Of a stretch of DNA of 64,000 bases, positions 3,651-58,124 are shown one piece after another. The DNA is from Vitrella brassicaformis CCMP3155 (Eukaryota; Protista; Chromerida): positions 1 to 64,000 of the forward strand of contig CDMY01000268.1 in NCBI GenBank assembly GCA_001179505.1. The letters are read 5' to 3'. Both the position numbers and the translations under genes were made by a program. The notes beneath the pieces are model-generated. The model made no database searches. It was not told the DNA's origin and saw only the letters and a program-made list of their open reading frames with translations. Numbering within the stretch: position 1 is the first letter of the stretch; every line of letters starts with the position of its first letter.

Positions 3651-4880
3651 ATGCTCTGCTCTGATGAGATGAGACACAGAAGATGCAGAGAGGGGGGCAG
3701 ACAGGAGAACCTCACTTCACACGCACTTTTGTATTTGCGCCTTACACACTCACACGCAAAGAGAGAGGGCGGGAGTCATGGGAAAGAGGCGACACACACA
3801 GCACCATCACTACCACACCCACTTCTCACACGGTCAGCCAGGTGCCTTTCTAGCCCAAATATTTGTTTCTGTGTGAGCGCATCGCATCATCGTTTTTGTT
3901 TGGTGGGTGGGGTCGTTTTTCTTTTGTGTACACATTCGTCTAGAGACACGGTTCTGTACACACGTTTGTGAGTGGGTGGATGGTGGGTGGGTCGGTCCGG
4001 TCTGTACGCACATGTGTGTAAGTAATTCTATCTCTGTACTTCTTCACACGCATGTGTAGGGTGGTGGTGGTGGGCATGGAGGGTGAGTGGTGTAGCCACC
4101 GATCTGTCTGTCTGCTGTGAGGGCGAAAGCTGCCCTGCTCTCTGCCTGCCTGTCTTACTCGCCGTATTTGCCTTACTCGCCGCTGTTGATATTACCGCCC
4201 TTATTGCCATATGCCATTCATTCGATGAAGAGGATAGGAACTTGTGTGTGCCATGCACATGTGTGGATGTAACGTGAGGGCTGTACGGACCTATGACAGA
4301 TAGCGTTCTTTGCATTGGATTGATGTACCGCGCTGAGAGATAGGGATGGATTCGTAGCTCGTCTCTACTACTCTCGAGCTCGTCCAGCCACACGGACAGA
4401 CAGGAAGAGGAAATGGCGTTCGTCGCCCCACACCTAGTGCGATGGTTCGTGTGTGTGTGTTTGAGTGGGTGCTGTGCTGTGCGTGATGCGATGCTGTAGT
4501 GAAAAGTGGCAATCAAATGAATGAATGAGACAGATGGATGGATGGAACTACTACATACGAGACGCCCTGTATATGTCGTGTGTGTGTATGCGATGCAGTC
4601 TAATCGATTGAGAGTGCCAAATGGATATATATATGAGTCTGGCCACACACCACACCACACACGCACATGCACACATGTGCAACACAACCATCCATCCATC
4701 GTGTCGTGTGATGCAGCAGCAACAAACAGAAAAACACCCGCCCTCAGCCAGCCCGTCCGGCTCGAGCAAGTAACCATTTCCACATGTGCACTCGTGTGTG
4801 TCCATGCGTGTGTCAGAATAGGAGCACGATGCCGCGGCTGTTCATGCTTGCACAGCCACGGCGCCGTGCAGCTCGTCCGA

Positions 4881-34354: not shown

Positions 34355-34662
34355 GGGACACAGAGAGATGGCCGGCTGCAACCGGGTGCGTGTCGATAAC
34401 TGGATGGCCAGACAGACAAGAGGGCTCATGTGGGTGGGGGGGCGGGCGGGCGGGTGTATTGTTCGTGTGCGACAATGGAGCGAATCAACGAAGCTCGTTG
34501 GTCAAGTGGATATGCACGATACGCAATATCCTAGGCAAGGCCCCTGTCGCCGTGAGTAGGAGTCGCAGTAGAGGTAATATGACTGGCAGGTCCACGCCAT
34601 CAAAGCTTGTCACGTTGAGGAAGCACATGCATGTCTCAATCAATCTGACCTCTGCCTCACGC

Positions 34663-37589
34663 TCACACCACAAAGACATCTACTTCATCGGCCATGAAAT
34701 CCCTGCTGCCCCCAAACAGAGCGTTGCCCTTACGTCTCACCCCAACATAGCCCTCAGGCACATCTTTCCTGTGGATGGACTGACGGCAGCGGCGCATGTC
34801 AGTACGAGCGCCACCCTCACAGCCCAACCACAGCCACCAGCCGACCCTCACCTTCGCCCCGCCCACTGTCCCCTCCCGCCCGGCCACACGCACTGGCAGC
34901 CAGCCCTCCCCCATTTTGGTAGGTCCCTTGGCGAAGTGGCCGGCGAGCGAGAAATACCAGACATCACACCAGTAGTACTTCTTCTTGTAGCCTGTTGGGT
35001 CGTCGGGCACTTGGATGTTGGCACTGATGAAGGCGCCGAAGACGTACTTGTCCTTGCGGATGAGGAACACCAGGTTCTTCGTGTCGCCCACACACCGCAG
35101 CAGATCGCCATACGACGGCCCATCATGCGAGGCCCTGAAAATAGGAGAAAGACGGGAGAGAGAGAGAGTCAAACGATGGACGATGTAGGACACCTGTAGA
35201 TGAGCTTCAGGCTGTTTTCACTTGTCGCTCCGAGGAACCGATAGAGTGCCGCCGACTGGAGCGGAGCGAAAGCTGCACCCTCGACCACCTGCAATCAAAT
35301 CAACAGAACACTGATGAGGCTCTCCCTCGCTGATGTGTGAGTGACCTTAAGTGAGAGCAGTGACCGGCCATCAAGACGAATGACTTCCACCTCGTCGGCC
35401 GTGAAGTACTCACCGCCCCCAAACACAGCCCGGCCACGCTTACTCCTCAGCCCCACATAGCCCTCAGGCACATCAAGGCTCCAGATGGAATGACCGCAGC
35501 TGCGCATATCATCAGCAGCGCCACACCCCAACCACAGGCACCCACCGAACCCACCGATCCCCAGCTTCGCCCCATCCACTGTCCCCCCCCGCCCCGCCAC
35601 CCACACGCACTGCCTGCATTCCCACAACTTGGTCGGTCCCTTGGCGAAGTGGCCGGCCAGCGAGAAATGCCACATATCACACTCGTACCCGTCGACGCCC
35701 GTTGGCTTAGCGGGCGGCTGGATGCCGGCGCTGATGTAGACGCCGAAGACATAGATGTCCTTCCGGATGATGAACAACAGGCCGGTATTGTCGCCGACAC
35801 AATGGAGGAGATCGGCATACGACGACCCATCACGTGAGGCCCTGAGAATACGACAAACACATGCTTGATCGATTGCACGGGCTTTCTGTGATGTGTGTCG
35901 TACCTGTACAGCAGAGTAAATCCCAACTCGTCAAACACGGATGGGACAAGCCAGGAGTGGAGGCCCGCACACTCAGCCTCACTCAAACTGCTGCCAACGA
36001 TCATCTGCACGTAAACGCAGACGCTAGTCTTGAAGATTGCATGCATTCTTGTTTCTTATCTGGACGCAATCATGCCATGTGCAGACTCTCACTTGCGGGT
36101 CATGCAGTTTGTCATCCTCGTCTGTTGTGCTGCGAATTGAAACGGCCATGACATGACCAACCGCACCATCAGACACACTTATCATATCATCACCATCCTG
36201 ATGGCACAGCACAGATGTGCAATAAGTGATGTGCTGCCGTCTTTGTCTGTGTCTGTCTGACCTCTGCTATGTCACTCAGGCTATCGTCGGCAGTCATTGT
36301 GAACACAGACTTGGCCGATGAACGGGACCACACCTGCACACACAAACTCACAATGCCTGACCGTCTGTGTGGGTGTCCATTTCACTGCCTTTTGCTGACC
36401 ACAGACGGCGGGCCCTCTCGGTGGCTGCGTGTGGGGGTCCTTTGGATTTTGTTTGGCGGCCTCTCGTTGGTCAGTCGACTCTCTGACGGCGCCATCTGAA
36501 CGACAACACATACAGCTCAAATAAGTTGCTGCTGCTGCTTTCGCCAACGTGTGAATGAGTCCTCTTGGTTTGGTTACGCTCATGGTGTTTTGCCCCGAGT
36601 GCTGCGACTGCTGGTCGAGCGGCCGATTGCGGGCAGCAGCAGCATCGTCGTCTAGTGGGCAGGTGGGGGTCTGCAGCCAGACAAGTCAAGACACGAAGGT
36701 GTTACTTGCTGCTGTGGTGTCAGCCCGCTGAGTGTCTTACCTGTCGGCTGAGGTCGGTCATCGGTCCGATGAAGCCATCTGCCACCTGGATGTCAGCAGC
36801 AGCAGCAGCAGCATCAGCTGAAGCTGCTTCCGACTGGTGAGTGAGGGGCCTGGGTAAGGGATGGGGATGCGGCGGACGCATTGGGAAAGGGGGATCGACA
36901 GCAGCAGCAGCTGCTGCAGCGGCAGGTGGCTCAGAGGACGGCAAAGGAATCTGAAAAAGGAGGCATAGACTGATGAAAAGTGGATCTCTCACTGCATTTG
37001 TTATCTTTGCCTGACCTGTTGGCATCGCTTCCTGAAGGTTTTGATCCACTTGTCGCTCGCCGAGAAGCCAGTGACGCCCAGCCGAATGGCGATCTCCATC
37101 GCCTTGGCTCTGATGGCCTTGGGGGGGACGCTCGTGGGGTCGTCATGGGTAGCCATCCACTGCCGCATGTCGTCCTCGATCTGCTGGTACTTGGGCGGCC
37201 TGTTGCGCTTCTTGTCTGAGTCGACGATTTGCTTGCCCTCCTCCCTCTGTTTTTTGGTGGCATAACACCACTGCCTGAAGCGCTTGGGTGGAATGCCTTT
37301 CTCCTTGGCGAACTGGGACATGTTGATGGACTCGCCGGATTGCTGTCGTCGAATGAACTCGTCCACCAGCTGCAGCCGCTCGCCGATTGCCACCTCGCCC
37401 GCCCTCTCTGTCGACATCTGGACAACCGTGAACAGCAGACATGTGAAGACATGTGAGTGAGCGCAGTTTCACCTGTTGTGAGGATCCTCCTGTCGTTCCT
37501 TTTGTTGATGTGGGCCGTGGTGGGAGCGACTCCGAGCGATCGTAATGGGAAGCAGCCGATGCACCCCCGCTTACCACCGGCTGACCCAT
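34663..37589 (-). CDS. CENP-B/pogo-type HTH-TLDc-TLDc (copy 2, apparently intact)
   Basis: ERLQLVDEFIRRQQSGESINMSQFAKEKGIP..RNRPPKYQQIEDDMRQW..IRAKAMEIAIRLGVTGFSASDKWIKTFRKR, phase-consistent exons, and two LLYR|ASxDG TLDc exons ending FMADEVDVFVV*. Confidence 0.85.
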
Positions 37590-39288
37590 AACCACCAGGC
37601 CATGATTCAAAAAGGGCCACTCAGCGTCATCTAATCGACAATCGGATCCTCGTCTGTGCGGTTCTCAGTGTGTCGTGTCGGTCCACTCACTGTGATGCGA
37701 GTCTGTCGTCAATCCACCACCGAGATCATTCGATTCCCATTCTGTCTGTGGCTGCACTGCGCACACAGACACACAGACACACAGCCAGGGAGGGTCAACA
37801 GACGTCAAACAGATGGCCGTGCAGCGACTGTGTTTGCGCACCTGATGATGAGCGTTTTCGTGATTCACCGTGACTGCAGCGGCGGCAGCCACCTGTGGGG
37901 AAAGGCCACCACGTGACATTGCTTGCCGGGTGTGCTCACCCCACTGACGCACGTACCTGTGTTTGACTGTAATGACGCTCATGATGCTCCTCGGCCGATG
38001 CGGTGGCCCACATCCAATCACCCTCAAGATCACCCTGCACACACATGAGAAGCAGACGAAAAATGAGCCAAAGCAGTGACGTGTTGCGGCACAGCACATT
38101 ACCTGTGCGTCAGATCTGCCCAAATCACTCATCAGAATGCCCTCTTTTCGCCGGACGATGAGTTTTTTCACTCTCTCTTTCAGATCGCTGCAGCTCGCAA
38201 AAAGCGGAAGGAAGGGGGGGAAGAGGGGTGCTGGACGATCTGGTGTGGCTGTTGTGTTGTCTGTAGGTCACCTCCTCCGAGCGACAGTGGAGATCTGGCT
38301 GTGGTGATCTGGCTGCTTCTCCTGGCAATCTTGTGACGTCACGTTTTGAGACCACCACCCGGAGGGCACACACGATGGGTCAAACACGTGGTGCCTTCGT
38401 CTTTCTCAGTTTCGTCGGCAGATGAGCGTACACGATCGTGCCGAATTAGAGGACTCATCGATACTCTCGCCTCCGCTACCCATGGGTCCGGGCTCGCTCG
38501 TCGAGCCCGGACATCCCGTCGCTGCTGATCCTGCCTGTCCTGCCTGTCCTGATCTGAGCCTGCCTGTACCGAGTCAAATGGGAGAGAGCCATCCGCCCTC
38601 ACGAGCCCGACAGCGCGACGTGCGCGCGGGGGAGACCGGTGGGCGGGTGTGTCACGAAGGACACGGGTGGGTGCGCGAAAAAGCGTCGCCCGTCGAACAG
38701 CGTCCGCGACGTGACTGTCGCGAGTCGCGACCGAAAACCGGCCAAGAAACATCGAGCTCGCAAGCGCGCCCGTGTGTCTGTGAGCGCGTCGCTGCGGCTG
38801 CGAGTACGTACGCCACCGCACGCAGGCGTGCTCAGGCTGCCATACTCTCGCCTCCGCTACCCATGGGTCCGGGCTCGCTCGTCGAGCCCGGACATCCCGT
38901 CGCTGCTGATCCTGCCTGTCCTGCCTGTCCTGATCTGAGCCTGCCTGTACCGAGTCAAATGGGAGAGAGCCATCCGGCCTCACGAGCCCGACAGCGCGAC
39001 GTGCGCGCTCCCAAATGCCAACAGTAAACCGGTACAGGGCAGGCGAAGGCTGCATCACGGTGACGAAGCGAGGGAGGAGAGCTGAGTCACCGTATGCCTC
39101 AGAATCATCCTCTGTCCGTCTGTCTGTCTGTCTGTCTGTCTTTCCGTCTATGTCTTCGATGTCTCGTGCTGCCGGCGCTTTGCTTGGCGCTTTATCGTTA
39201 CTGGTTCACCGGACCCGATCAGGCCGCCCCAGAGACATCACGTGATGGCCATGGCACGGGCGCCTGCGTGTGAACGGAGTAGTTTCTT

Positions 39289-41907: not shown

Positions 41908-42689
41908 AACACTGTCGGCTTGCTGCTGCTGTTGCTTCCTTGACCCAGGCGTGCTAAGCCTGTGACTGGTGTGTTTTCCTGACTCTTCGCAGACTACCGT
42001 GATGTGTCGGTAAGGGTAATTCGCTCTGCCTGGCTCTCTCTCGCCAACCCGATTTCGAAATTGAACTCTCCGGTAACCCTCGATCTATTCGGCTGAATAC
42101 TCTGTTTCCTTCTCTTGCTCCCCGCCGGGCTCCGCGTCGGTTTATTCTTCGTTTGGATCGGGCGCAGCCCTCTCTCGGCTTCCTCTGTGGTTGACTGTCT
42201 AACAGGCAAGGTCCTACGAGACCACCACGCCGTCGCGAAAAGGATTTTTATCACACCATTCTGCGATCGCTCGTCAGACATCTGCAGTTCGCGGTTTGCT
42301 ACGGAGCCACGGATGCTGCTCGTTTGGGGGCCTCGTTATGTAAGTTACTCGTCGCAATCCTAAATCGCTGGCGCCTTTCTTGTGAGGCCTTGTTCGTGGG
42401 GCGAGAATCTTCTTCGTGGGGCGAGAATCTTGTTTGGGACGATAACATGTGACCTCCGCTTGTGTCGAGGTGTATTGCCTCTCTGACCCATGCATACTCG
42501 AGATACGGCGCTCTACGTGACACGCAGTCATCGATTGCAGACGCTTCGAGGAGCCCTAGACGAAAACTTCATCGTCACTAAAACGAATCGTCCAAGGGGT
42601 GCGACGATAAGCTGACACTCTGATAGAGGCCTAGCCATACGCCAACGAACGCCCGCAGCGGCTGCGACTCGCGATGGGAGGACGAGGGA

Positions 42690-45600
42690 GGCCCGCTTGC
42701 GGCCACGAGTCGATAGAGACAGAGGCCTCACGCCAACGAAACGGTCGCTGCTCCGAATCGACGAAGACAAGCGATGAGAAGCTGACGAAGACCCGATCGC
42801 GGCCACGACTCGATAGAGACGCAGAGCTACAAGCCAACGACGGCCCGCAGCTATAATCGACGAAGAGAAGCGATGAGAGGCTAACGAAGGCCCGATCGCG
42901 GCCACGACTCGATAGAAACACAGAGCCACGAGCCAGCGACGGCCCGCAGCTATAATCGACGAAGAGAAGCGATGAGAGGCTAACGAAGTCCCGATCGCGG
43001 CCACGACTCGATAGAGACACGGAACCACGAGCCAGCGACGGCCCGCAGCTATAATCGAAGAAGAAAAGCGATGNNNNNNNNNNNNNNNNNNNNNNNNNNN
43101 NNNNNNNNNNNNNNNNNNNNNNNNNNNNNNNNNNNNNNNNNNNNNNNNNNNNNNNNNNNNNNNNNNNNNNNNNNNNNNNNNNNNNNNNNNNNNNNNNNNN
43201 NNNNNNNNNNNNNNNNNNNNNNNNNNNNNNNNNNNNNNNNNNNNNNNNNNNNNNNNNNNNNNNNNNNNNNNNNNNNNNNNNNNNNNNNNNNNNNNNNNNN
43301 NNNNNNNNNNNNNNNNNNNNNNNNNNNNNNNNNNNNNNNNNNNNNNNNNNNNNNNNNNNNNNNNNNNNNNNNNACTCATTTTTGCCGATGCGTTGCACTG
43401 CTGACCGCTTGGCGGTTTGAGTGTCGTCTGGCGTACGAGTCGCCGCTCGGCGGCTTCCGTGTCGTGTCGTGTGGATAGCTGGTTGCTCGGCCGCTCGGCG
43501 GCTTTCTTTCGTGTCGTGCGGATAGATGGCCGCTCGGCGGCCCGGATGTTGTTTGGCGTTGCGAGTCGTTGAATAGTATGTGTTGCGGCTTGGTTTAATT
43601 TAGCTGCTAGCGAGTCCCACACGGGGGGCCGACATCATGACGCCAACCGAGTCCTGCTGTGACTCGGTGGCTGTTACTGTCTGTCAGTTGTCGTTCTCCT
43701 CGTCCTTGGGTAGAGACGACTCGCTGTCGTCCTGGCTCCAGTAGCAGGGGCGTTGAAGTCGATGGATCCAGCAGCAGGGGCGTTGAAGTCGATGGATCCC
43801 GCAGCACACTCGCAGCAGCAGGGGGGTCGAAGTCGATGGATCCAGCAGCAGGGGCGTCGAAGTCAATGGATCCAGCAGCAGGGGGGTCGAAGTCGATGGA
43901 TCCAGCCGCAGGGGCTTTGAAGCCGTGGGTCCAGCAGCACACTCGCAGCAGCAGGGGGGTCGACGTCGATGGATCCGGCAGCAGGAGCGTCGAAGTCGAT
44001 GGATCCAGCAACAGGGGCGTCGATGGAGCCAGCAGCAGGGGCGTCGAAGTCGATGGATCCAGCAGCAGGGGCGTTGAAGTCGATGGACCGGCTCCCTGGC
44101 CGACGGAAGATCTCCCTGAGAAACTCGCATCGGGGAGGAGGACGAACCGCACCACCCTGCGCAAGCCTCGAGCAGCATTTGCACCACCCAGAGGGGCCGC
44201 CCCTGTTGCGAGGAGGTACACACCGGGGGGGGGCACCGCGGGGTTAGAGGATGGGAGCGGGGATGCTTGGGGGATGCACCACTATGGGCGGATCTCGCCT
44301 CGTGGTACCGACAAGTGCGCGAAAAAGCGTCGCCCGTCGAACAGCGTCCGCGACGTGACTGTCGCGAGTCGCGACCGAAAACCGGCCAAGAAACATCGAG
44401 CTCGCAAGCGCGCCCGTGTGTCTGTGAGCGCGTCGCTGCGGCTGCGAGTACGTACGCCACCGCACGCAGGCGTGCNNNNNNNNNNNNNNNNNNNNNNNNN
44501 NNNNNNNNNNNNNNNNNNNNNNNNNNNNNNNNNNNNNNNNNNNNNNNNNNNNNNNNNNNNNNNNNNNNNNNNNNNNNNNNNNNNNNNNNNNNNNNNNNNN
44601 NNNNNNNNNNNNNNNNNNNNNNNNNNNNNNNNNNNNNNNNNNNNNNNNNNNNNNNNNNNNNNNNNNNNNNNNNNNNNNNNNNNNNNNNNNNNNNNNNNNN
44701 NNNNNNNNNNNNNNNNNNNNNNNNNNNNNNNNNNNNNNNNNNNNNNNNNNNNNNNNNNNNNNNNNNNNNNNNNNNCCCGATCGCGGCCACGACTCGATAG
44801 AGACACGGAACCACGAGCCAGCGACGGCCCGCAGCTATAATCGAAGAAGAAAAGCGATGAGAGGCTGACGAAGGCCCGATCGCGGCCACGACTCGATAGA
44901 GACACGAAACCACGAGCCAGCGGCGGCCCGCAGCTATAATCGAAGAAGAAAAGCGATGAGAGGCTAACGAAGTCCCGCTTGCGGCCACGACTCGATAGAG
45001 ACACGGAACCACGAGCCAGCGGCGGCCCGCAGCTATAATCGAAGAAGAAAAGCGATGAGAGGCTAACGAAGTCCCGATCGCGGCCACGACTCGATAGAGA
45101 CACGGAACCACGAGCCAGCGACGGCCCGCAGCTATAATCGAAGAAGAGAGGCGATGAGAGGCTGACGAAGGCCCGATCGCGGCCACGACTCGATAGAGAC
45201 ACGGAACCACGAGCCAGCGACGGCCCGCAGCTATAATCGACGAAGAGAAGCGATGAGAGGCTAACGAAGGCCCGATCACGGCTACGACTCGATAGAGACA
45301 CGGAACCACGAGCCAGCGACGGCCCGCAGCTATAATCGACGAAGAGAAGCGATGAGAGGCTAACGAAGGCCCGATCGCGGCCACGATTCGATAGAGACAC
45401 GGAACCACGAGCCAGCGACGGCCCGCAGCTAGAATCGACGAAGAAAAGCGATGAGAGGCTGACGAAGGCCCGATTGCGGCCACGACTCGATAGAGACACG
45501 GAACCACGAGCCAGCGACGGCCCGCAGCTTGAATCGACGAAGACCTACGGTGAGAGACTGACAACGGCCCGTTCGCGGCCACGACTTGATGGAGACACGA

Positions 45601-45790
45601 CGAAGCCACAAGCCAGCGACGGTCCGCAGCCATAATCGACGAAGACAAACGATGGAAGGCTGAGAAAGGCCCGCTCGCGGCCACGACTCGATGGACACGA
45701 AGCCACAAGCCAGTGACGGCCCACAGCTACAATCGACGAAGACAAGCGATGAGAGGCTGACGAAAAGCCCGTTCGCGGTCACGACTCGGC
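42690..45790. repeat. 99-bp tandem arrays (~4 copies at 42690-43073, ~10 copies at 44776-45790)
   Basis: Unit CCCGATCGCGGCCACGACTCGATAGAGACACGGAACCACGAGCC..GACGAAGG starts at 44776 and 44875. It translates on the minus strand as a 33-aa repeat. Confidence 0.9.
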
Positions 45791-46680
45791 AGGGCACGCA
45801 ACTATTAGTCTGCGCACTTTGATCGACTTGTATTTGTCATAGATCGTCAGCTTGTTACACTGCCGCCATCGACTATGCACTCCTTCTATTAGTCTATCTA
45901 CCCGTTGCTTATCCGTTGTCGCCCGAGTGGCAGACAAGGAATGGCGCGGATTCAACTTCCTTGCGCTCGTGCGCGGCGGGATTTAGTGCGAAGACAAGTG
46001 ACTGTTAAACGTCTGGCTAGTGACGAGACGTCGCTCTGCTTCCTGAAGCGGGAAGAGAGAGGAGGGTCGGTGGAGAGAGAGAGGGAGAGAGAGAGGGAGA
46101 GAGAGAGGGAGAGACTAGTGAGAGTGAGAGAGAGAGATTCAGGTACGAGCGTACAAACTTATCGATCCCTCGAAATCGTTGTGCTGTCNNNNNNNNNNNN
46201 NNNNNNNNNNNNNNNNNNNNNNNNNNNNNNNNNNNNNNNNNNNNNNNNNNNNNNNNNNNNNNNNNNNNNNNNNNNNNNNNNNNNNNNNNNNNNNNNNNNN
46301 NNNNNNNNNNNNNNNNNNNNNNNNNNNNNNNNNNNNNNNNNNNNNNNNNNNNNNNNNNNNNNNNNNNNNNNNNNNNNNNNNNNNNNNNNNNNNNNNNNNN
46401 NNNNNNNNNNNNNNNNNNNNNNNNNNNNNNNNNNNNNNNNNNNNNNNNNNNNNNNNNNNNNNNNNNNNNNNNNNNNNNNNNNNNNNNNCAGCAGCAGGGG
46501 GGTCGAAGTCGATGGATCCAGCCGCAGGGGCTTTGAAGTCGTGGGTCCAGCAGCACACTCGCAGCAGCAGGGGGGTCGAAGTCGATGGATCCGGCAGCAG
46601 GGGCGTCGAAGTCGATGGATCCAGCAACAGGGGCGTCGAAGTCGATGGATCCAGCAGCAGGGGCGTTGAAGTCGATGGAC
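43740..46680. repeat. 30-bp tandem arrays (CAGCAGCAGGGGCGTCGAAGTCGATGGATC) at 43740-44090 and 46490-46680
   Basis: Repeated unit giving STSTPLLLDP on the minus strand. Each array is followed by the same ~230-bp segment and repeat B. Confidence 0.85.
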
Positions 46681-47349
46681 CGGCTCCCTGGCCGACGGAA
46701 GATCTCCCTGAGAAACTCGCATCGGGGAGGAGGACGAACCGCACCACCCTGCGCAAGCCTCGAGCAGCATTTGCACCACCCAGAGGGGCCGCCCCTGTTG
46801 CGAGGAGGTACACACCGGGGGGGGGCACCGCGGGGTTAGAGGATGGGAGCGGGGATGCTTGGGGGATGCACCACTATGGGCGGATCTCGCCTCGTGGTAC
46901 CGACAAGTGCGCGAAAAAGCGTCGCCCGTCGAACAGCGTCCGCGACGTGACTGTCGCGAGTCGCGACCGAAAACCGGCCAAGAAACATCGAGCTCGCAAG
47001 CGCGCCCGTGTGTCTGTGAGCGCGTCGCTGCGGCTGCGAGTACGTACGCCACCGCACGCAGGCGTGCTCAGGCTGCCATAATGAGGTTCAGTGATTCCGG
47101 AGCTATGCAGGATTACTCCCGCAGCGTGCTGCTGTCTGGCTGTTGTCGGCATAGTCGCAATGAATGGTGAGTTGTCCGTTTTTGCTTTCGCAGCAAGGGC
47201 GTCTGAGATTCAGGCTTCTGCCACCTTGTGCTTGCTCTGCAGGTGGTGTTCCTCTGTCACGGCCACACTTCCTGCATAGAGTTCACGAGCAATGGCGTTT
47301 CATCAAGCTCGATCGCCATCGGTCTCAGTCGCTGGCCGACCCCATCAAC

Positions 47350-48287
47350 ATGACCACCCCAGAGGAGCATCGGCAAGTGTGGCTCACCAAGGAGAGCACC
47401 CAGCTCATTATGGGTCAGCCAGGGTGGCAGCTGACCCTCCTGCCGGCCAAGATCGACGAGGACGCCCGGCCGCGGCCACTCCGCCATCTGTACCGCCTCC
47501 AGGATTTCCGCAAGCCGGCAATGGACATTGACGAGCAGGCGACCGACTACGACAGCCAGTGCGGCGTGCGCGTCTACTGGGGAGGTGAGCTGGTGGACGA
47601 GGTGCGCTATGTGCCGGTCAAGAAGAGCAAGGACGACAAGCTGTGCGCCACGTGTGTGGTGCCGGGTGCTGATGGCAATGGCAATGTGGGCATCTGCGGC
47701 AAGCAGAACACCTACCGCAACGTGGTCAATACTCACCTGCGCAAGACTCACAAACTGACAAACGAGGATGCACAGGTGGGTGAAGGGCCAAATGGCTGTG
47801 GGTGGGCCTTATCTACGAGTGTTTGACATTGTGCGTTGCCTGCAGCTGCTGCTTGTCGGCCCTCAGTCACTGGCGCCCTCAACCGCCGCCACACACACAC
47901 GTACGGTGCGTGTTTGCCTTCTGCTTGTCTGTCCATCATGACTGCTGCATGCTGTGTGTGTGTGTAAACAGCTGTCACGCCCTTCGTGTTTGCCGGCAGT
48001 GTGATCCACCCAAGTGGCAGCGGCGCAGATACGTGAGTGAGCACGTTCACACGTCGTGGTGTGGCTGTCTGTGGACACGTCCGCGCGTACGTGTGTGCAG
48101 GCCATCCCTCGGTGTTCTGCCGTTTGACGCCATACTCACCGACTTGCAAGCGCCGATGGCTGCTGCTGCTGAAGACAGCAGCGTGACGCGGGAGATCGGA
48201 CAGACAGACACGCTCACACGCGAGGAGACCGACCCTTGGGCTGACGGATGGGTCAACAGCGTCATCGGCGCTCATATGGGCCATTAG
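47350..48287 (+). CDS. Putative C2H2/BED-like zinc-finger protein with acidic C-terminus (copy 1)
   Basis: MTTPEEHRQVWLTKE..LCATCVVPGADGNGNVGICGKQNTYRNVVNTHLRKTHKL; four phase-consistent exons ending DPWADGWVNSVIGAHMGH*. Confidence 0.65.
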
Positions 48288-48760
48288 TGAGTGTGCTTGG
48301 CGTGCCTCTATATGACCGGTGTAATGATGTGGCTTGTCTCTGGGTGGGTGTCTCGCGTGTGTGTGTGTGTGTGTATGTGTCTCGTCCTTGTGTCTGGTCC
48401 TTTGTTCTACCTGCCTGGAATCTGCGCCGGTCATTTTTGACTCGTTTTGTGTCCGCATCAGCCACAGAGGGATGAGCGACGCAATGTGAAAGGGCCAAGA
48501 CTGTATCGTGATGCTATACGCAGACTGCCCTGATTGAAGTCATGATGTTGCAGACGGGCAGACAGACAGACAGACAGAGAGGGAGGCCCATGTGGGCGGG
48601 TGTCTGAGGGGGTTGCTCGTTGGCGAGCAACGCGTATGTGTGTGGGGGGCTGACACTGACAATGAAGCGAATCAACGAAGTTGGTTGATCAATTGAGTTT
48701 CCACGATATGTGTGTGTCACATTCGGTCAAAAATGCGGCGTTTTCAAACCGCATTCGCAC

Positions 48761-49767: not shown

Positions 49768-51132
49768 ATGGACGAGCTCATTCCCTTTGTAATGGACATC
49801 GTTCCGGTCGCTGCACTCTACGCTGGAGTGGCGGCCGTGATCTTCGGCAGCTGGCCACGCAAGAATCGGACGACGCCCAAGGACTTTCAGAAGCCGCTCA
49901 GCCTGTCTGAGGCGCTGACCGACTTCGGCGAGGCGGCCAGGTACGCACACACAGGAGAAAATCTTCCATCACCTCCAGTGTTCGCTCTCCCATAGGGATC
50001 TCGACGGGGCCCTGGATTCCGTGTCGGACATCCTGACGCGGCTGCAGACCATCTTGGCACCTGGTGAGACCTTCAAACTACTGGTCGTGGGGATAACTGG
50101 ATAAGCGGCAAAGAGGAATGCACGACCGACGCCAAGAACACACAATCGTGCATGTCTCTTCGCGTCTCGCAGCCATGGCAAGACCTCGTTCCTCAATTCC
50201 CTCCGTTCAATCATGCGGTGCTTGGTGGACGACAAAACGAACGGCACGAGCGAGAGATACAACGGCAAATTCACGCAGGTATGGAAGGAAATTGGTATTT
50301 TCTTCATGTGATTGGTGTCATTTCTTGTCGACATCCTCGACTCTCCCTTCTCAGTTTGAAGCCCAAGGCAAGACGCGCAGCACCCACATCACCAAGCATT
50401 TCATGACCAAGTGGGCGGCACCTAACAACCATGACATCCCTCTCCAGTTCCAGGACACGCCTGGCATCGCCGTCCCTCACGAGATCACCGACATCATTAA
50501 AGCCGTCGAGGTGGGCACACACTGGGGGGGCTCACGCAGAGTCATCTTTCCCCCCGTGAGCATACAGGGTCGTCTCCCAGAGGACGGCTCTAACGTGGTC
50601 AAGCCAAATGCACCGCTGGTGGTGCTCAGCTGTGAAGTGGATACTGCCTCAGAGGAGTGCAACAACATCAAAGCCATCATCCGACACGGAATGGACGTCC
50701 AGAAAGGTAATCATCCACCCATACGAACATACAAGAGACTGTACATTTGTGTCTGCTGGCAGGTGGTGTGTATGTGGTGTGCACGAAGGCCGACAAGCTG
50801 CCCTTCGTCACCAGGCAGGGACTCACGACACGCAAACAGCGACTCGAGTTCTTCCAGTCCCCCAAATTTGAGAGGGAGATCGACATCCGCCGCGCGAAAG
50901 TGGCCGAAGACCTCGGGTGCGGACACACACATTGACACACACACACACCCCCCTACATCAAAACGCCAGGCCTGCTGTCTGTTATCTGTGTGTCCTTAGT
51001 GTTGACATGAGCCACGTGTATTGCGTGGTCAACTATGGCGAGGATGGCTATCTCAATCCGGTCATGAGCCTGCGACTTGTCCACGTTTTGAAGAGCATCG
51101 TCACCGACTGCTACCTTCGCTTCGAGCAGTAG
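49768..51132 (+). CDS. IFI44/IFI44L-like P-loop GTPase with N-terminal TM segment; one intron has a non-canonical AT donor
   Basis: GCCACCATGG start; TM VPVAALYAGVAAVIFG; G1 LLVVGITG/HGKTSFLNSLRSI; G3 DTPG; G4 TKAD; C-terminus VAEDLGVDMSHVYCVVNYGEDGYLNPVMSLRLVHVLKSIV..EQ*. Confidence 0.7.
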
Positions 51133-51854
51133 GTAAGAACGCAACTGCCAGACTCTCCAGCGTCTGTCCTTTTCCGTTTGCAGGACCAAGTATCATGTGT
51201 GCCAACGCCGCTGCTGTATGTCGTGACGTGACGTGTCGTGACGTGACGTGTTCCATGGCTGTGCGATTCTGTCTCGCCGCTGCGCTTGCGCAGACTTGCT
51301 GGTGTATCGGCACTTGCGGGTGTGGCATGCTTGCGCATGAGCGTTAAGCAGTTCGTATGATTTCAATCGTGTTGTCTCTGCTTGTCGGGACGGTGGGATA
51401 CATGGAGGGTACACAGAAGTACGTGCACACTCAGCCGATTTTTATGCCTTCTGTTTGTCTGATTTCATAAAGATCACACTCTTTGCGCTGCATCCAGAAA
51501 CACAACGTTTGTGTTAGTTTGATATTCTCAACGTGGCTGTGGCATCATATTAAAAATCAAAGTACGAAATCACGATGCAATTAATGTGTCCAAATCGTCA
51601 GCAGCAAAGTCCCTGCTGCCTCGTTCAATGAATCTGACCCCTCCCGCCCACTATCCTTCTGTCTGTCTGTCTGTCTGTCTATCACACAGCATCTGCCTGT
51701 CTGCTGTGTATGCGGACAGACCACATCGCACCAATCCAGCGAACACAACGAACACAGAGGGCCGAGAACAGAGAGGCCTCACAAATCTGAATAAAAGCAA
51801 TACGCATACAGCACAGCCATCAGAGACTTCCTCAAGTGATCTCGGGCCTCACAC

Positions 51855-54800
51855 TCACACCACCTCGAGCACCTCCACCTCATCTGCCATAAACTGACGA
51901 CTGCCCCCAAACATAGCAGAGCCATGCTCATCCCTCACCCCCACATAGCCATCAGGCACATACTCGCTGAGGATCCGCTGACGGCAGATGCGCATGTCAG
52001 CAGCAGCGCCACCCTCACAGCCCAACCACAGCCACCCAGTCCCACTGATCCACAGCTTCGCCCCATACATTGTCACCTCCCGCCCAGCCACCCCCACCAT
52101 CCGGCTGCCTTTTTTCATCATCTTCGGTGTGTCGAAGTGGCCGGCCAGAGAAAAATCACACCCATCACACTGGTAGACGTTCAGTGGTTTTGGGTCGTCG
52201 GGCAGTCGGATGCCACCACTGATGAAGGCGCCGAAGACGTACTCGCCCAATACATACATGTCCCGTCTGAATACATACATGTCCCGTCTGACGATGAACA
52301 CCAGGCCCTTCGTGTCACCCACACACCGCAGGAGATCATCATATGACGCCCCGTCACGCGAGGCCCTAAGAATAGAAGACAGACAGAGTCAAAGGATCGA
52401 CCTGTTCTAAGGTCAGGTGTACCTGTAGATCAGCTTCAGTTCATGGGTTCCCATTGCCGGCCCCAGAAACCGATAGAGTGCCGAAGATTGAAAGGGATCA
52501 AAAGTTGTGCCCTCGATCACCTGCAATATAACAACAACATCGCCGTCTGATTCGATCTCTCTTTGATGTGTGTATGACCTTGAGTGACAGCAGGCCGTCG
52601 ACACGAATGACTTCCATCTCATCAGCCATAAACTCCTCACTGCCCCCAAACAGAGCACGGCCAGCCTCATTCCTCACCCCCACATAGCCCTCAGGCACTT
52701 CCCAGCTCCACATGAAGCGACGGCAGCTGCGAATATCAGCAGCAGCAGCAGCGCCACCTCCATAGCCCAACCAACGGCCCAGCCAACCGAACCAGCCATC
52801 CCCATGGCCCCATCCCAACCAGTCGCATGGCCCGATCCTCACCCTTGCCCCTCGCACTGTAGCTCTGTCCCGCCCGGCCACACAAACTGGCCATTTGCCT
52901 TCCCACGTGATGGTGGGCTTTTCAAAGTGGCCGGCCAGCGAGAATTGCCACCCATCACAGTCGTACTCGTTTCTGCCTCTAGGGTCGTCGGGCAGCCGGA
53001 TGCCGGCACTGATCCAGGAGCCGAAGACGTACTTGTCCTTGCGGATGATGAACGCCAGGCCACTCGCATCGCCCACACACTGAAGCAGATCACCATAGGT
53101 TGCGCCATCGACAGAGGCCCTTAGGATACCAGAAAGACGACAGAGAATGACACATGATTGATTGCAGGCCCTGTGTGTGGTTTGTTTGTACCTGTACAGC
53201 AGAGTGAATTTACATTCGTCCAACATGGACGGCACGAAGAGGGAGCGGAGGGCCGTACGTTCAGACGAAGTCAGTCTGCTGCCAACGATCATCTGCACGC
53301 AGACAGACGCACGTGTTGGTGACTGCATTTTTGTTTCTGATCTGGACGCAATCATGCCATGTGCAGACTCTCACTTGCGGGTCATGCAGTTTGTCATCCT
53401 CGTGTGTTGTGCTGCGAATTGAAACGGCCATCACATGGCCAGCCGCACCGTCAGACACACTCAGCCTATCATTATCGTCCTGATGACAGTACAGCGAAGA
53501 TGTACAACAAGTGAGTTTCAGTCCTCTTTGTCTGCGTCAGTCTCACCTCTGGTATGTCACTGAGGCGATCGTCGGCAGTGACGGTGAAGACAGACTTGGC
53601 CGATGAACGGGACCACACCTGCATGCACACAAACTCACAATGCCTGACCGCCTGCCTGCCTCTCCGTGTCTGTGGGTGTCCACTTGATTGCGCTTCACTG
53701 ACCACAGACGGCGGCCCCTCTCTGTGGCTGCGTGTGGGGGTCCTGTGGATCTTGTTTGGAGGCCTCTCGTTGCTCAGTCGGCTCTCTCACGGCGTCAGCC
53801 AGCTGAAGAGCAACAGGAGTAGATGTATAGCAGAAACTTATTCCGCAACACATGAATGAGCCCTCTTGCTTTACTTACGCTCATGGTGTTGCGCTCTGAT
53901 GGCTGCGACTGTGTGTCGAGCGGCCGATCGCTGGCAGCAGCATCGTCGTCTGGTGGACATGTCGTAGCCTGCAATGACGACGGCAGACACATAAAGGCCT
54001 CATTTGCTGCCGTGGTGTGCGCAAGCTAGGTGTATCACTTGTCGGCTGAGGTCGGTGGTCGGTCCGATGAAGCCATCCGCCATTCGCACCGCAGCTGCCT
54101 CATCAACCTTTTGGCCCTGCAAGGCACCACAGGAGAAACATGCATGGGCTGGGTGCATTGTCTGACGTCGTATACCTGCTGATCGCTGACGCTGTCGCCT
54201 CTTGGTGGCGGTGCAGGGACAGACTCGGTGCTCTGGGAGAAGAGAAACACATGTCGCTGAAGGGGCATGTGGCTGTGCAGTGCGCACCTGCCTGGTCCAT
54301 CCGGTCTTGTCAGGGAGCTCCTCTTGTGGCGGCTGGCAGGTGAGGGGCATGGGTAGAGGGTGGGGGTGGGGCAAATGCATCGGCAGCGAAGAGATGGACG
54401 CTGAGCGAGCTACGGACGAAAAGCAGCCGTTTGTTGAGAAGAGGAGTGCTGATGAAGGGCATGGGCCAGGCAGAGGGGCTACTAAAGCTGCGGCGGCGGC
54501 AGGTGGGTCAGAGGACGGCAAAGGGATCTGGAGTAGGCATGGATCGACAAACGTGGATGATACTTTGTCCATCCTACTTGTAAGCATCGTTTTCTGAATG
54601 ACTTGATCCACTTGTCGCTCGCAGAAAAGTCCCCGACGCCCAGCCGACTGGCAATCTCGATTGCCTTGGCTCTGATGGCCCTTGGGGGGACGCTTGTGGG
54701 GTCGTCATGGGTGGCCATCCACTGCCGCATCTCGTCCTCAATCTGCCGGTACTTGGGCTGCCTGTTGCGCTTCTTGTCCGAGTCGGTGACCGGCATCCCG

Positions 54801-55145
54801 GCCTCCCTCTGCTTCTTGATGTCACTGCACCACTGTCTGAAGCGCTTGGGTGGAATGCCTTGCTCCTCCGCAAACTGGGACATGTTGATGGACTCGCCGG
54901 ATTGCTGCCGGCGAATGAACTCGTCGACCAGCTGCAGCCGCTCGCTGATGGCCACCTCGCCCGCCCTCTCTGTCGACATCTGGACAACCGTGGACAACAG
55001 ACATGTGAAGGCATGTGAGTGACCGGATTTTCACCTGTTGTGAGGATTGTCGGGTCGTGCTTCTTGATGTGGGCTGTGGCGGGAGCGACTCAGCTCGATC
55101 GTGGTGGGCAGCTGATGCACCCGCGGTGATCACCGGCTGACCCAT
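51855..55145 (-). CDS. CENP-B/pogo-type HTH-TLDc-TLDc (copy 3)
   Basis: ERLQLVDEF..RNRQPKYRQIEDEMRQW..GDFSASDKWIKSFRKR; same exon chain as copy 2; TLDc exons at ~53121-52580 and 52366-51855 with an in-frame RRDMYV duplication. Confidence 0.85.
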
Positions 55146-56302
55146 AACCACCAGGCCATGACTCGAAAAAGGCCAATCAGCTTCATCTAATCGACAATCG
55201 CATCCTTGTCTGCACGGCTCTCAGTGTGTCGTGTCTGTCCACTCACCGTGATGCGAGTCTGTCGTCAATCCACCGCCGAGATCATTCGATTCCCATTCTG
55301 TCTGTGGCTGCATCGCGCACAGACACACAGCCGGGGACGGTCAACAGACATCAAACAGATCGCCGTGCATCGACTGTGTGTGCGACTATGTGTTCGCACC
55401 TGATGATGAGCGTTGTCGTGATTCACTGTGACTGCAGCTGCGGCAGCCACCTGCTGGGGGAACGGACAGAGCCACCGCCGGGTGTGTTCATCTCACTGAT
55501 GCACGTACCTGTGTTTGGCTGTCATGATGCTCGTGATGCTCCTCGGCCGACGCCACGGCCCACACCCAATCACCCTGCACAAACATTAGAAGCAGACACT
55601 ATCGAATCAGCCAAAGCGGTGACGTATTGCGGCACAGCACACTACCTGTTCGTCAGATCTGCCCAAAGCACTCATCAGAATGCCTTCTTCTCGCCAAAAC
55701 GATGAGTTCTTGCCTCTCGTGCCGAGATCGCTGCAGCTCGCACCAAAGCGGAATGAAGGGGCAGGAACCGCAAGGGAGCCCGTTGGATGCTATCCGTGTG
55801 GCTGTTGTGTTGTCTGCAGGTCGCCTCCTCCGAGCGACAGTGGAGATCTGGCTATCGTGATGCGGGGGACGCTCCACGCTGCTGCTGCTCCTTGTGAAAG
55901 TCTTGTGACGTCACGTTGAGACCACCACGACGGCCCAAACACGGTGGGTCAAACATAAGAGCTTCCTCTTTCTCAGTTTCATCGGCAGATGAGCGTTCAT
56001 TTCGGCACGATCGTGCCGAATTACGGGATTGTGCCTCTGAATACGCTGGTGATCGGCGATGCAGGATTGATTACTTGTGCGGCGTGCTGCTGTCTGGCTC
56101 TTCTCGGCATAATTACAATGAACGGTGACTTGTGCATGTTCACCTCATGCACACCGGACCTGCCAAGCACACGGTGTTTGCTGTTTGCTCTGCAGGTGGT
56201 GTTCCTCTGTCACGTGCACACCTCCTGCATAGAGTTCACGAGCAATGGCCTTCCATCAAGCTCGATCGCCATCGGTCTCAGTCGCTGGCCGACCCCATCA
56301 AC

Positions 56303-57234
56303 ATGACCGCCCCAGAGGAGCATCGGCAAGTGTGGCTCACCAAGGAGAGCACCGAGCTCATTATGGGTCAGCCAGGCTGGCAGCTGGCCCTCCTGCCGGC
56401 CAAGATCGACGAGGACGCCCGGCCGCGGCCAGTCCGCCATCTGTATCGCCTCCAGGATTTCCGCAAGCCGGCAATGGACATTGACGAGCAGGCGACTGAC
56501 TTTGACAGCCAGTGCGGCGTGCGCGTCTACTGGGGAGGTGAGCTGGTGAACGAGGTGCGCTATGTGCCGGTGAAGAAGAGCAAGGACGACAGGCTGTGCG
56601 CCACGTGTGTGGTGCCGTGTGCTGATGGCGATGGCAATGTGGGCATCTGCGGCAAGCAGAACACCTACCGCAACGTGGTCAACTCTCACCTGCGCAAGAC
56701 ACACAAACTGACAAACGAGGATGCACAGGTGTTTGGACAGACGGCCACATGGTTGTTGCCTCGTAAACGTGTGGTGTGCATTGTGCGTTGCCTTCAGCTG
56801 CTGCTTGTCGGCCCTCAGTCACTGGCGCCCACAACCCCCGCCACACATACACGTAAGATGCGTGTTTGCCTTCTACTTGTCTGTTCATCATGACTGCTGC
56901 ATGCTGTCTGTGTGTAAACAGTTGCCACGACCTTCGTGTTTGCCGGCAGTGTGATCCACCCAAAAGGCAGCGGCGCAGATACGTGAGTGAGCACGTTCAC
57001 ACGTCGTCGTGTGGCTGTATGTGGACGCGTCCGCCCGTAGGTGTGTGCAGGCCATCCCTCGGTGTTCTGCCGCTTGACGCCATGCCGGCTGCTGCTGATG
57101 CCGATGCCGATGGTGCTGAAGACAGCAGCGTGACGCGGGAGATTGGACAGAGAGGCGCCTCCACACGCGAGGAGACCGACCCTTGGGCTGACGGATGGGT
57201 CGACAGCGTCATTGGCGCGCATATGGGCCATTAG
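56303..57234 (+). CDS. Putative zinc-finger protein (copy 2)
   Basis: MTAPEEHRQVWLTKE..CGKQNTYRNVVNSHLRKTHKL..DPWADGWVDSVIGAHMGH*, paralogous to 47350-48287. Confidence 0.65.
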
Positions 57235-58124
57235 TGAGTGTGCTTGGCGTGTCTCTATATCACCCGTGTAATGATGCGGCTTGTCTCGGGTGGGTGGGTA
57301 GTTGACACTACTAGTTGTCTTGTTCGTGTATGTGTGTGTGTCTGGTCCTTTGCTCTACCTGCATGGAATCTGCGCCGGTCATTTTTGACTCGTTTTATGT
57401 CCGCATTAGCCACAAGAGGGATGAGCGACGCAATGCGAAAGGGCCAAGACTGTATCGTGATGCCATACGCAGACTGCCCTGATTGAAGTCATGATGTTGT
57501 TGAAGGTATGGATTCCCAGCAAGTGTCAACAGACAGACAGACAGACAGAGAGACAGGGGGGTCGATGTGGGTGGGAGGGTGGGTGAGTTGATTAATCGAG
57601 CGACACGTGTGACAAAGAAGCGAATCAAAGCACCTTGCTATGGTACGATTCGCCAATATCCCTGAGCAAGGCGTCTCACGCTGACGCATTGCACCATCAG
57701 GCATACACAAAACACCTCACAAGACACGAAACACCAAAATCGAATCAAGAACCCCTCTCCCCATTCTCGCACAAGTGCACAGACCGATGAGTGTCGCTTG
57801 TGATACGCCAGGCACAAACAGACAGACAGACAGACAGACAGCTTTGTCAAACGGCTCGCCGCAACAAAAGCACACACACTTGGATGCATCAAGCCCTCGC
57901 CCAATGCAGAGACATGCACGTACGTCAACACATGAATCAAATGCAATTCAATCGACACGCATCGATACCCAGGCAGGCAGGAAGGTGAGCAGAAAACGAC
58001 CAACAACCCATCACCCTCGCCTCCCTCCCTCCGCCCCTCCGTGTCGGTCTGTCTGTAGGTCTCTCTCTTCCTGTCTTCCTCTCTCCTGCCGCATCTCTTG
58101 ACATTCAGCCCGCCGGTCAGGAGC

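What the first reader, a model, noticed from the sequence alone, without database searches (positions are those of the whole stretch)
49768..51132. Stand-alone IFI44-like GTPase inside a TLDc gene cluster: a possible protist innate-immunity locus
Seen: G1/G3/G4 motifs plus GKTSFLNSLRSI, DIIKAVEGRLPED and VAEDLG....VYCVVNY......P...L..L..I. These match my recollection of animal IFI44/IFI44L (GKSSFFNSVRS; LG......VVSNY.....DP..D.LIL.AL). Established: IFI44 proteins are interferon-induced antiviral factors built as TLDc + this P-loop domain. Here the GTPase has a TM anchor instead of TLDc, while seven neighbouring genes supply TLDc fused to RING or HTH and show rapid birth and death. Inference: a modular 'split IFI44' defence or stress system with a membrane GTPase, TLDc-E3 ligases and TLDc-transcription factors.
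Basis: partly seen in the sequence, partly recalled or inferred. Interest (0 to 1): 0.75.

Follow-up and report, generated by a model that had tools for sequence, protein, structure and literature searches.

The report
Membrane-anchored IFI44-like GTPase gene, possibly crippled
The alga Vitrella brassicaformis has a real, transcribed gene here for a small membrane-tethered GTP-binding protein that most resembles the GTPase half of the animal antiviral proteins IFI44/IFI44L, but its place among TLDc genes looks like coincidence and its GTP-binding loop may not be spliced together.

Summary
Window 49768-51132 (+) is a seven-exon gene of Vitrella brassicaformis. Exons 3-7 match the public model CEL98337.1 and an MMETSP transcript ORF exactly.

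The IFI44 label is partly supported. The whole protein's nearest neighbours in the ESM Atlas are IFI44/IFI44L clusters (features 0.93/0.90; structure TM 0.68-0.73). No E-value-based search finds any relative, inside or outside this genome, and the N-terminal half alone looks like a generic G domain.

The "split IFI44 + TLDc defence module" is not supported:
- TLDc is hugely expanded here (at least 130 six-frame hits).
- The GTPase sits in the unique spacer between two tandem HTH-TLDc-TLDc copies and was not duplicated with them.

One lead remains: an unrelated IRG-type GTPase lies beside another copy of the same TLDc subfamily on contig C908.

New caveat: the P-loop is rebuilt only by an AT-AG intron with an in-frame TAA. 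Both the public model and the transcript ORF start after the P-loop, so this copy may be crippled.

The scan already noted IFI44-like GTPases at three other loci of this genome.

The parts
49768..49940 (+). Exon 1: start codon (caccATGg), acidic N-terminus, hydrophobic signal-anchor (residues 5-29 = 49780-49854), then basic patch PRKNR
   Evidence: Sequence reading. Kyte-Doolittle maximum 2.14. The frame continues into exon 2 through a GT-AG intron.
49996..50100 (+). Exon 2: linker, strand beta-1 and first half of the P-loop (..ETFKLLVVGITG)
   Evidence: Translation. It is not in the public model P0001.
50101..50172 (+). Intron 2, 72 nt, non-canonical AT..AG (equivalently GA..CA). The donor GG|ATAAGC looks like GTAAGC with A at +1. 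An in-frame TAA lies at 50102-50104.
   Evidence: Sequence. No canonical donor/acceptor pair restores G-x4-GKT. The public model and the transcript ORF start downstream.
50173..50278 (+). Exon 3: second half of the P-loop (HGKTSFLNSLRSI) and the Met at which the public model starts (MRCLVDD)
50355..50510 (+). Exon 4: switch region and G3 DTPGI (50454-50468), start of DIIKAVE
   Evidence: Identical in P0001.
50568..50706 (+). Exon 5: GRLPEDGSNVVKP...VVLSCEVDTAS...IKAIIRHGMDVQK
50763..50916 (+). Exon 6: G4 TKAD (50783-50794), helical stretch, VAEDLG
51000..51132 (+). Exon 7: VDMSHVYCVVNYGEDGYLNPVMSLRLVHVLKSIV..., stop TAG 51130-51132
51855..55030 (-). Neighbour unit C: HTH_Tnp_Tc5 ORF (54485-55030), then TLDc (52501-53370), then TLDc (51858-52388). 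It is convergent with the GTPase; the two stop codons are 722 bp apart.
   Evidence: Pfam, alignment A1.
34596..38429 (-). Neighbour unit B: HTH_Tnp_Tc5 (37004-37468), then TLDc (35298-35930), then TLDc (34666-35217). Paralogue of unit C.
47226..48550 (.). Block D1, 90.7% identical to D2 (56178-57499). With unit B it forms one copy of a tandem duplication whose second copy is unit C + D2. The GTPase lies in the unique spacer between the copies.
   Evidence: Self-BLAST of the window. The ORFs in this block have no Pfam hit.

Best explanation
This is a lineage-restricted, single-copy, transcribed Vitrella gene.

With all six introns removed it encodes about 300 residues, in this order:
- an acidic N-terminus;
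- one signal-anchor helix followed by a basic patch, so the rest of the protein should face the cytosol (inferred from the positive-inside rule);
- a linker of about 45 residues;
- a TRAFAC-type G domain with G1 GITGHGKTS, G3 DTPGI, G4 TKAD and a helical C-terminal extension.

The most likely mode of action is a GTP-binding switch tethered to an endomembrane (inferred). Its nearest look-alikes are the G domains of animal IFI44/IFI44L. I therefore read it as a very divergent stand-alone member of an IFI44-like G-domain group that other scan notes report at three further loci of this genome.

Its position among TLDc genes is best explained by two things: the huge TLDc expansion in this alga, and residence in a duplication-rich region. 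It does not need a functional module to explain it.

The P-loop is reconstituted only by an AT-AG intron, and the only transcript-derived ORF on record starts after the P-loop. This copy may therefore make no complete GTPase.
For: Gene and splicing. P0001 equals exons 3-7, and an MMETSP transcript ORF is identical.

Membrane anchor.

G-domain fold: Atlas structural neighbours of residues 1-118 are HflX, EF-Tu, FeoB and septin G domains (TM 0.5-0.59).

IFI44-likeness: whole-protein Atlas features 0.93/0.90 with 177/189 shared features. Structural rows are dominated by IFI44/IFI44L at TM 0.68-0.73. G3 is followed by a hydrophobic residue, as described for IFI44 (paper 10.1101/2020.02.24.963900).

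Incidental linkage:
- TLDc has at least 130 hits on 54 contigs.
- 1.5-2.6% of the genome lies within 5 kb of a scored TLDc hit, and only 4 of the window's 9 TLDc ORFs were among the scored hits.
- The GTPase sits in the unique spacer between tandem copies.
- There is no GTPase remnant beside the other units and no paralogue.

Possible defect: TAA at 50102-50104. No 300-aa version exists in the 5.8-billion-cluster collection.
Against: - No E-value-based method links it to IFI44 or to any GTPase family.
- The IFI44 signal is absent from the N-terminal half taken alone (IFI44-like at 0.81, rank 13).
- The tool's own figures say shuffled proteins reach 0.9 in 4-10% of cases.
- The AlphaFold single-sequence model was useless (pLDDT 35), so I made no fold comparison of my own.
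- I could not bring any IFI44 sequence into the session for a direct alignment.
- A second GTPase (IRG-type, P0002) next to the same TLDc subfamily on C908 argues mildly against pure coincidence.
Confidence: 0.5

Rival explanations
1. It is a TRAFAC GTPase of another or an unclassified lineage (IRG-like, AIG1/septin-like, Era-like or a true orphan). On this reading the IFI44 resemblance is convergence in a few motifs plus a nearest-neighbour artefact of the language model.
For: - No significant sequence hit to anything.
- The N-terminal half returns only generic G domains.
- The C-terminal pattern 'hydrophobic-x-x-N-Y ... P ... L' is also seen, in my reading, in the Vitrella IRG-type genes (IYLTSRNY, YLISGWY).
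Against: - Whole-protein Atlas hits are overwhelmingly IFI44-like. Septin is only 0.81 at rank 30.
- Pfam IIGP, AIG1, Septin and MMR_HSR1 give nothing at E<=10 on P0001.
- BLASTP against the Vitrella AIG1-like protein and against P0002 finds nothing.
- hhalign against the IRG-like alignment gives probability 0.2%.
Confidence: 0.3
2. This is the first reader's model: a modular 'split IFI44' system in which the membrane GTPase works together with the neighbouring TLDc-RING and TLDc-HTH proteins in defence or stress.
For: - The gene is 722 bp from a TLDc gene and sits inside the densest cluster of the HTH-TLDc-TLDc subfamily. Six of about 35 units are on contig C268.
- On C908 another unit of the same subfamily lies head-to-head, about 1.2 kb from an IRG-type GTPase.
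- Animal IFI44 joins TLDc to this kind of G domain.
Against: - The two GTPases are unrelated in sequence.
- The TLDc units are 72-87% identical in DNA, while the GTPases were not copied with them.
- The three other IRG-like loci are on contigs without scored TLDc hits.
- The earlier scan notes on other IFI44-like loci do not mention TLDc.
- By a rough count, about 35 units x 2 neighbours x about 0.8% G-domain genes gives 0.56 expected cases against 2 seen (Poisson p about 0.1). The 0.8% share is my own estimate.
- The GTPase itself may be crippled.
Confidence: 0.08
3. This explanation does not compete with the family question. This copy is a recently disabled gene. A G-to-A change at position +1 of the intron-2 donor blocks splicing, so the mRNA yields a 94-residue anchor fragment ending GITG-stop and/or a 215-residue protein without a P-loop.
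For: - The donor GG|ATAAGC is the only non-GT donor of six.
- An in-frame TAA sits at the second codon of the intron.
- The genome annotation and an independent transcript-derived ORF both begin at the Met after the P-loop.
- No longer version exists in the collection.
- Introns 3-6 are spliced in that ORF, so the retention is specific to intron 2.
Against:
- ORF callers can trim to a downstream Met.
- Exons 1-2 are still open and still encode a perfect strand + P-loop half, and the rest of the gene has no defect. Any loss must therefore be very recent, or AT-AG splicing works at some level.
- An assembly error at base 50101 is not excluded.
Confidence: 0.4

Closest known systems
Animal IFI44 / IFI44L (interferon-induced protein 44 family), including the short stand-alone 'IFI44-like' G-domain proteins of fish
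   Same: - G1 of the type G-x4-GK[ST]-S-F.
- G3 DxxG followed by a hydrophobic residue.
- A G4 close to [TN]KxD.
- A C-terminal extension. The collinear motif match is from my memory of the human sequence and is a lead only.
- They are the nearest clusters by language-model features and by predicted structure.
   Different: - There is no TLDc domain; an N-terminal membrane anchor stands in its place.
- No significant sequence similarity by HMMER or BLAST.
- It comes from an alveolate alga, not an animal.
- G4 is complete (TKAD), whereas human IFI44 lacks a full G4.
IRG / p47 immunity-related GTPases (Pfam IIGP, PF05049) and the Vitrella 'IRG-type G domain' gene P0002 on C908
   Same: - Large stand-alone G domain with a helical C-terminal part.
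- A gene of this kind also lies next to an HTH-TLDc-TLDc unit.
   Different: - P0001 has no IIGP hit.
- No BLASTP or hhalign similarity to P0002 and its paralogues.
AIG1 / GIMAP GTPases, some of which are membrane-anchored
   Same: Small TRAFAC G domain tethered to membranes. AIG1-like genes exist in this genome (C666).
   Different: - GIMAP anchors are C-terminal.
- No sequence similarity.
- No AIG1 Pfam hit.
TLDc proteins (OXR1, NCOA7, TBC1D24, mEAK7, Rtc5p): V-ATPase-binding regulators
   Same: The neighbours carry TLDc domains.
   Different: - The neighbours here join TLDc pairs to a Tc5/CENP-B-type HTH, or single TLDc domains to RING-like exons.
- They belong to a species-specific expansion.
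- Nothing links them functionally to the GTPase.

Membership tests
TRAFAC-class GTPase (G domain) | G1 Walker A G-x4-GK[ST] | tested here: inconclusive
   GITG|HGKTS is perfect, but only if the AT-AG intron 50101-50172 is removed. The public model and the transcript ORF lack it.
TRAFAC-class GTPase (G domain) | G3 DxxG and G4 [NT]KxD in the right order and spacing, with a G-domain fold | tested here: met
   DTPG and TKAD are in P0001. Atlas structural neighbours of residues 1-118 are all G domains.
IFI44 / IFI44L | N-terminal TLDc domain fused to the G domain | tested here: not met
   Exons 1-2 encode a membrane anchor and a linker. There is no TLD hit in the gene.
IFI44 / IFI44L | Statistically significant sequence similarity to family members | tested here: not met
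   - Only a self hit in 1.84 billion representatives (exons 4-5).
- Only a self hit in the word searches of the whole protein and of residues 116-215.
- A direct alignment with IFI44 sequences was not possible, because no tool delivered one.
IFI44 / IFI44L | Closest fold and feature neighbours are IFI44-family G domains | tested here: met
   Features 0.93/0.90; 26 of 30 hits; structure TM 0.68-0.73 to IFI44/IFI44L clusters. This does not hold for the N-terminal half alone.
IFI44 / IFI44L | Induction by interferon, virus or an equivalent stimulus | not testable with these tools
   No expression data were reachable beyond the existence of one MMETSP transcript ORF.
IRG (IIGP, PF05049) | Match to the IIGP profile or to IRG-type relatives | tested here: not met
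   No Pfam hit at E<=10. hhalign against the Vitrella IRG-like alignment gives probability 0.2%.
AIG1 / GIMAP (PF04548) | Match to the AIG1 profile or to AIG1-type relatives | tested here: not met
   No Pfam hit. BLASTP against the Vitrella AIG1-like ORF gives E = 20.
TLDc (PF07534), for the neighbours | Match to the TLD profile | tested here: met
   Eight of nine ORFs hit TLD (E 2.8e-7 to 7e-3), three of them at or above the gathering score. All nine align as paralogues.
RING E3 ligase, for three neighbours | Complete C3HC4 RING recognised by a profile | tested here: inconclusive
   Only split motifs are seen (C-x2-C...RCG | HSFCADV). There is no Pfam hit on single exons.

The most novel reading that the evidence does not exclude
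In this alveolate, fast-evolving GTPases of the animal 'interferon-inducible' types (IFI44-like here, IRG-type on C908) are functionally paired with HTH-TLDc-TLDc genes. On this reading the gene neighbourhood is a free-living 'Rosetta stone' for the TLDc + G-domain fusion seen in animal IFI44, and it points to an ancient, pre-animal partnership of the two modules.
Probability: 0.06. Interest if true: 0.7.

Novelty: new variant of a known kind. Interest (0 to 1): 0.3.

Why it matters
IFI44 and IFI44L are among the most strongly interferon-induced human genes, yet their biochemical function is poorly understood. The predicted GTP-binding site was even dispensable for restricting RSV (paper 10.1101/2020.02.24.963900).

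Clear relatives outside animals would help date the G domain and show which partners it works with. This gene adds one more candidate in Vitrella, here with a membrane anchor in place of TLDc. It is a weak candidate on three counts: it has no detectable sequence relative, it may be crippled, and its linkage to TLDc genes is not above what this TLDc-rich genome gives by chance.

The practical gain is a corrected gene model, since the public one lacks the anchor and the P-loop, and a concrete splice junction to test.

Tried and rejected
- Exon-by-exon Pfam scans, and a scan of the open E4-intron-E5 piece: nothing.
- PDB sequence search: only noise.
- NCBIfam and PADLOC: nothing.
- Metagenome scan: no relative.
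- AlphaFold2 on P0001 without an alignment: pLDDT 35. It was unusable, so no fold search was run.
- Joining the seven exons into one protein for searches or folding was left out. All searches used single exons by reference or the public model P0001.
- Hunt for the other IFI44-like loci of this genome, to test co-clustering and to fetch IFI44 sequences:
  - PF01926 hits and two P-loop DNA patterns led only to unrelated genes. These were Obg (C576, C242), EngA (C507), ABC ATPases (C185, C415, C437, C888), a Ras-like gene (C791), a dynamin-like gene (C304) and AIG1-like genes (C666).
  - The hunt also led to the IRG-type family (C275, C961, C908).
- Pfam IIGP against the genome in six frames: no hit.
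- Alternative canonical splice choices for exons 2-3 (donors at 50061, 50083 and 50086; acceptor at 50113): all destroy the P-loop or the frame, judged from the sequence.
- A GA-AG dinoflagellate-type intron: it frameshifts.
- Literature: no paper links Vitrella with TLDc or describes IFI44 outside animals.

Full report
**1. What is in the sequence**

The window belongs to a 72.7-Mb, 1064-contig genome and is contig C268, bases 1-64000. The only database protein that matches the gene is from Vitrella brassicaformis CCMP3155.

On the + strand, an ATG at 49768 in the context caccATGg opens a gene of seven exons that ends at TAG 51130-51132:

| Exon | Coordinates |
|---|---|
| E1 | 49768-49940 |
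| E2 | 49996-50100 |
| E3 | 50173-50278 |
| E4 | 50355-50510 |
| E5 | 50568-50706 |
| E6 | 50763-50916 |
| E7 | 51000-51132 |

Introns 1, 3, 4, 5 and 6 are GT-AG and 55-83 nt long.

I searched an open stretch covering exon 4, intron 4 and exon 5 against 1.84 billion representative proteins. The search returned one protein, P0001 (215 aa, 98% identical in two stretches). Its sequence equals my splicing of the end of exon 3 through exon 7, residue for residue.

P0001 is CEL98337.1 / UniRef A0A0G4EMU4. The identical sequence is also held as an MMETSP transcript ORF, Transcript_31809. The gene is therefore real and transcribed, and introns 3-6 are placed correctly.

**2. The protein**

Exons were searched singly by reference, or through P0001.

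- Exon 1 encodes MDELIPFVMDIVPVAALYAGVAAVIFGSW followed by PRKNRTTPK. The 19-residue Kyte-Doolittle maximum is 2.14, which fits a transmembrane signal anchor.
- The N-terminus is acidic and the following flank is basic. By the positive-inside rule the G domain should therefore face the cytosol (inference).
- Exon 2 ends ..KLLVVGITG and exon 3 begins HGKTSFLNSLRSI, giving a perfect strand plus Walker A.
- G3 is DTPGI (50454-50468) and G4 is TKAD (50783-50794).

**3. A problem in the P-loop**

Only one splice restores GITGHGKTS: removal of 50101-50172. This intron begins AT and ends AG (or, equivalently, GA..CA). Its donor GG|ATAAGC looks like a consensus GG|GTAAGC with A at position +1. The second codon of the intron is an in-frame TAA (50102-50104).

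Every canonical alternative I could construct loses the P-loop or shifts the frame.

The genome annotation and the transcript-derived ORF both begin at the Met after the P-loop (MRCLVDD). No longer version exists in the 5.8-billion-cluster collection. For an ORF caller to report exactly this 215-aa ORF, the transcript most probably carries the TAA, that is, intron 2 is retained while introns 3-6 are removed (inference).

This copy may therefore be a freshly disabled gene, AT-AG splicing may work at a low level, or base 50101 may be an assembly error.

**4. Which family?**

Sequence methods are silent:
- no Pfam, NCBIfam, PADLOC or PDB match at E<=10;
- no relative in the exhaustive search;
- none in two word searches, of the whole protein and of residues 116-215;
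- none in metagenome contigs;
- no paralogue in its own genome.

AlphaFold2 without an alignment failed (pLDDT 35).

The one positive result comes from the ESM Atlas, which holds P0001 with its own model (pTM 0.71):

| Atlas query | By features | By structure |
|---|---|---|
| Whole protein | 26 of the 30 nearest clusters are chordate 'G domain-containing' or 'IFI44-like' clusters (0.93 and 0.90; 177 and 189 shared features); septin is 0.81 at rank 30 | Six of ten rows are IFI44/IFI44L clusters (TM 0.68-0.73); bacterial MMR_HSR1 GTPases reach 0.57-0.60 |
| Residues 1-118 alone | IFI44-like drops to 0.81 at rank 13 | Only generic G domains: HflX, EF-Tu, FeoB, septin |

The specific signal therefore lies in the C-terminal half or in the whole arrangement.

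From my memory of human IFI44L the motifs are collinear (GKSSFFNS; D-I-x-x-I-L-x-G; FDASS; IKxIR; TH-V-D; VVSNY...DP...L). That is a lead, not a test, because no tool could deliver an IFI44 sequence for alignment.

Rival families were tested and failed:
- the Vitrella AIG1-like ORF (BLASTP E = 20);
- the Vitrella IRG-type protein P0002;
- an alignment of P0002's paralogues (hhalign probability 0.2%).

I put IFI44-like affinity at roughly 60%. Formal membership is not shown, and the defining TLDc fusion is absent.

**5. The neighbourhood**

The window holds nine paralogous TLDc ORFs (53-64% identical).
- Six of them form three units, each an HTH_Tnp_Tc5 ORF followed by two TLDc domains: + strand 21601-25600, - strand 37468-34666 and - strand 55030-51858.
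- Three single TLDc ORFs (9469-10005, 59705-60316, 62166-62651) are preceded by exons with RING-like half-motifs. Pfam does not recognise these on single exons.

A self-comparison of the window shows this order:

unit B (34596-38429) | insertion (38461-47080) | block D1 (47226-48550) | GTPase | unit C (51848-55996) | block D2 (56178-57499)

D1 and D2 are 90.7% identical. The GTPase therefore lies in the unique spacer between two tandem copies and was not duplicated with them. No GTPase remnant lies beside any other unit.

**6. Is the linkage more than chance?**

- TLDc gives at least 130 six-frame matches on 54 contigs, from 235 candidates of which only 150 were scored. Only four of the window's nine TLDc ORFs were among them, so the true number is about twice as high.
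- 0.4-0.7% of the genome lies within 1 kb of a scored hit and 1.5-2.6% within 5 kb. These figures should be roughly doubled for the unscored copies.
- Earlier scan notes list 67 TLDc findings with many architectures. They also list three other IFI44-like loci, none of which mentions TLDc. I could not locate those loci to check them.
- One gene out of several such GTPases falling next to a TLDc gene is not remarkable.

**7. A lead that points the other way**

While looking for paralogues I found a unit on contig C908 (L015) that is 72-87% identical in DNA to units A-C. It lies head-to-head, about 1.2 kb from a different GTPase gene:
- the public model is P0002, 374 aa, named 'IRG-type G domain-containing protein' by UniRef;
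- Pfam IIGP matches only at E = 0.037;
- its P-loop is degenerate (GVNGTAKTT).

Its three paralogous loci (C961, C348, C275) are on contigs without scored TLDc hits.

The HTH-type subfamily has about 35 units (43 matches). With two neighbours per unit and G-domain genes at about 0.8% of all genes (my estimate), about 0.56 such adjacencies are expected against 2 seen (p about 0.1). This is suggestive at most.

Fast-evolving families also tend to share duplication-rich regions whether or not they are functionally linked.

**8. Verdict**

- The IFI44 resemblance is plausible but rests on one kind of evidence.
- The 'split IFI44 innate-immunity locus' is not supported.
- The gene may be crippled at its P-loop.
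- The scan has already noted IFI44-like GTPases elsewhere in this genome, so this is one more divergent and doubtful member, not a new kind of system.

Noticed in passing
L015 (G000:C908:149000-158999): 1294-4425 (-) and 5637-7097 (+): An HTH_Tnp_Tc5-TLDc-TLDc unit of the same subfamily lies head-to-head with an 'IRG-type G domain' gene (P0002, 374 aa). That gene has a coiled-coil N-terminus, a degenerate P-loop GVNGTAKTT and G4 TKMD. It is a second, unrelated GTPase beside this TLDc subfamily.
   Followed up: partly
window 34596-38429, 38461-47080, 47226-48550, 51848-55996, 56178-57499: A tandem duplication of [HTH-TLDc-TLDc unit + block D]. The first copy is split by an 8.6-kb repeat-rich insertion, which is the element another reader noted. 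Blocks D1 and D2 (90.7% identical) hold ORFs without Pfam hits that end in a Cys-rich CxxC...CRQC stretch.
   Followed up: partly
L003 (G000:C666:279000-288999): 3923-4525 (-) and 7934-8557 (-): Two tandem, nearly identical AIG1/GIMAP-like GTPase ORFs (GATGNGKSTLANIICG...VVDTVGF). This is another 'immune-type' GTPase family in the alga.
   Followed up: no
G000:C268 (whole contig, 141.8 kb): Six of about 35 genomic HTH(Tc5)-type units of this TLDc subfamily are on this one contig, near 21952, 36908, 54485, 102378, 113663 and 121760. It is the densest cluster of the subfamily.
   Followed up: no
window 42671-43073 and 44776-45788: An array of ~99-bp tandem repeats (82-95% identical) inside a 680-codon open frame (43687-45726, -) within the inserted element. 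There is only a faint P-loop-kinase hit.
   Followed up: no
window 13082-13993 (+): An open frame with a PA (protease-associated) domain and a hydrophobic N-terminus. It is unrelated to the finding.
   Followed up: no
L002 (G000:C576:8000-17999): An Obg-type GTPase gene appears two or three times within 5 kb, each copy interrupted by runs of N. This is probably an assembly artefact and not a gene family.
   Followed up: no
L013 (G000:C961) and L014 (G000:C275:1-4000): Nearly identical IRG-type GTPase copies sit at a contig start and on a 7.9-kb contig, where two copies face each other. This is likely assembly redundancy of one locus.
   Followed up: no
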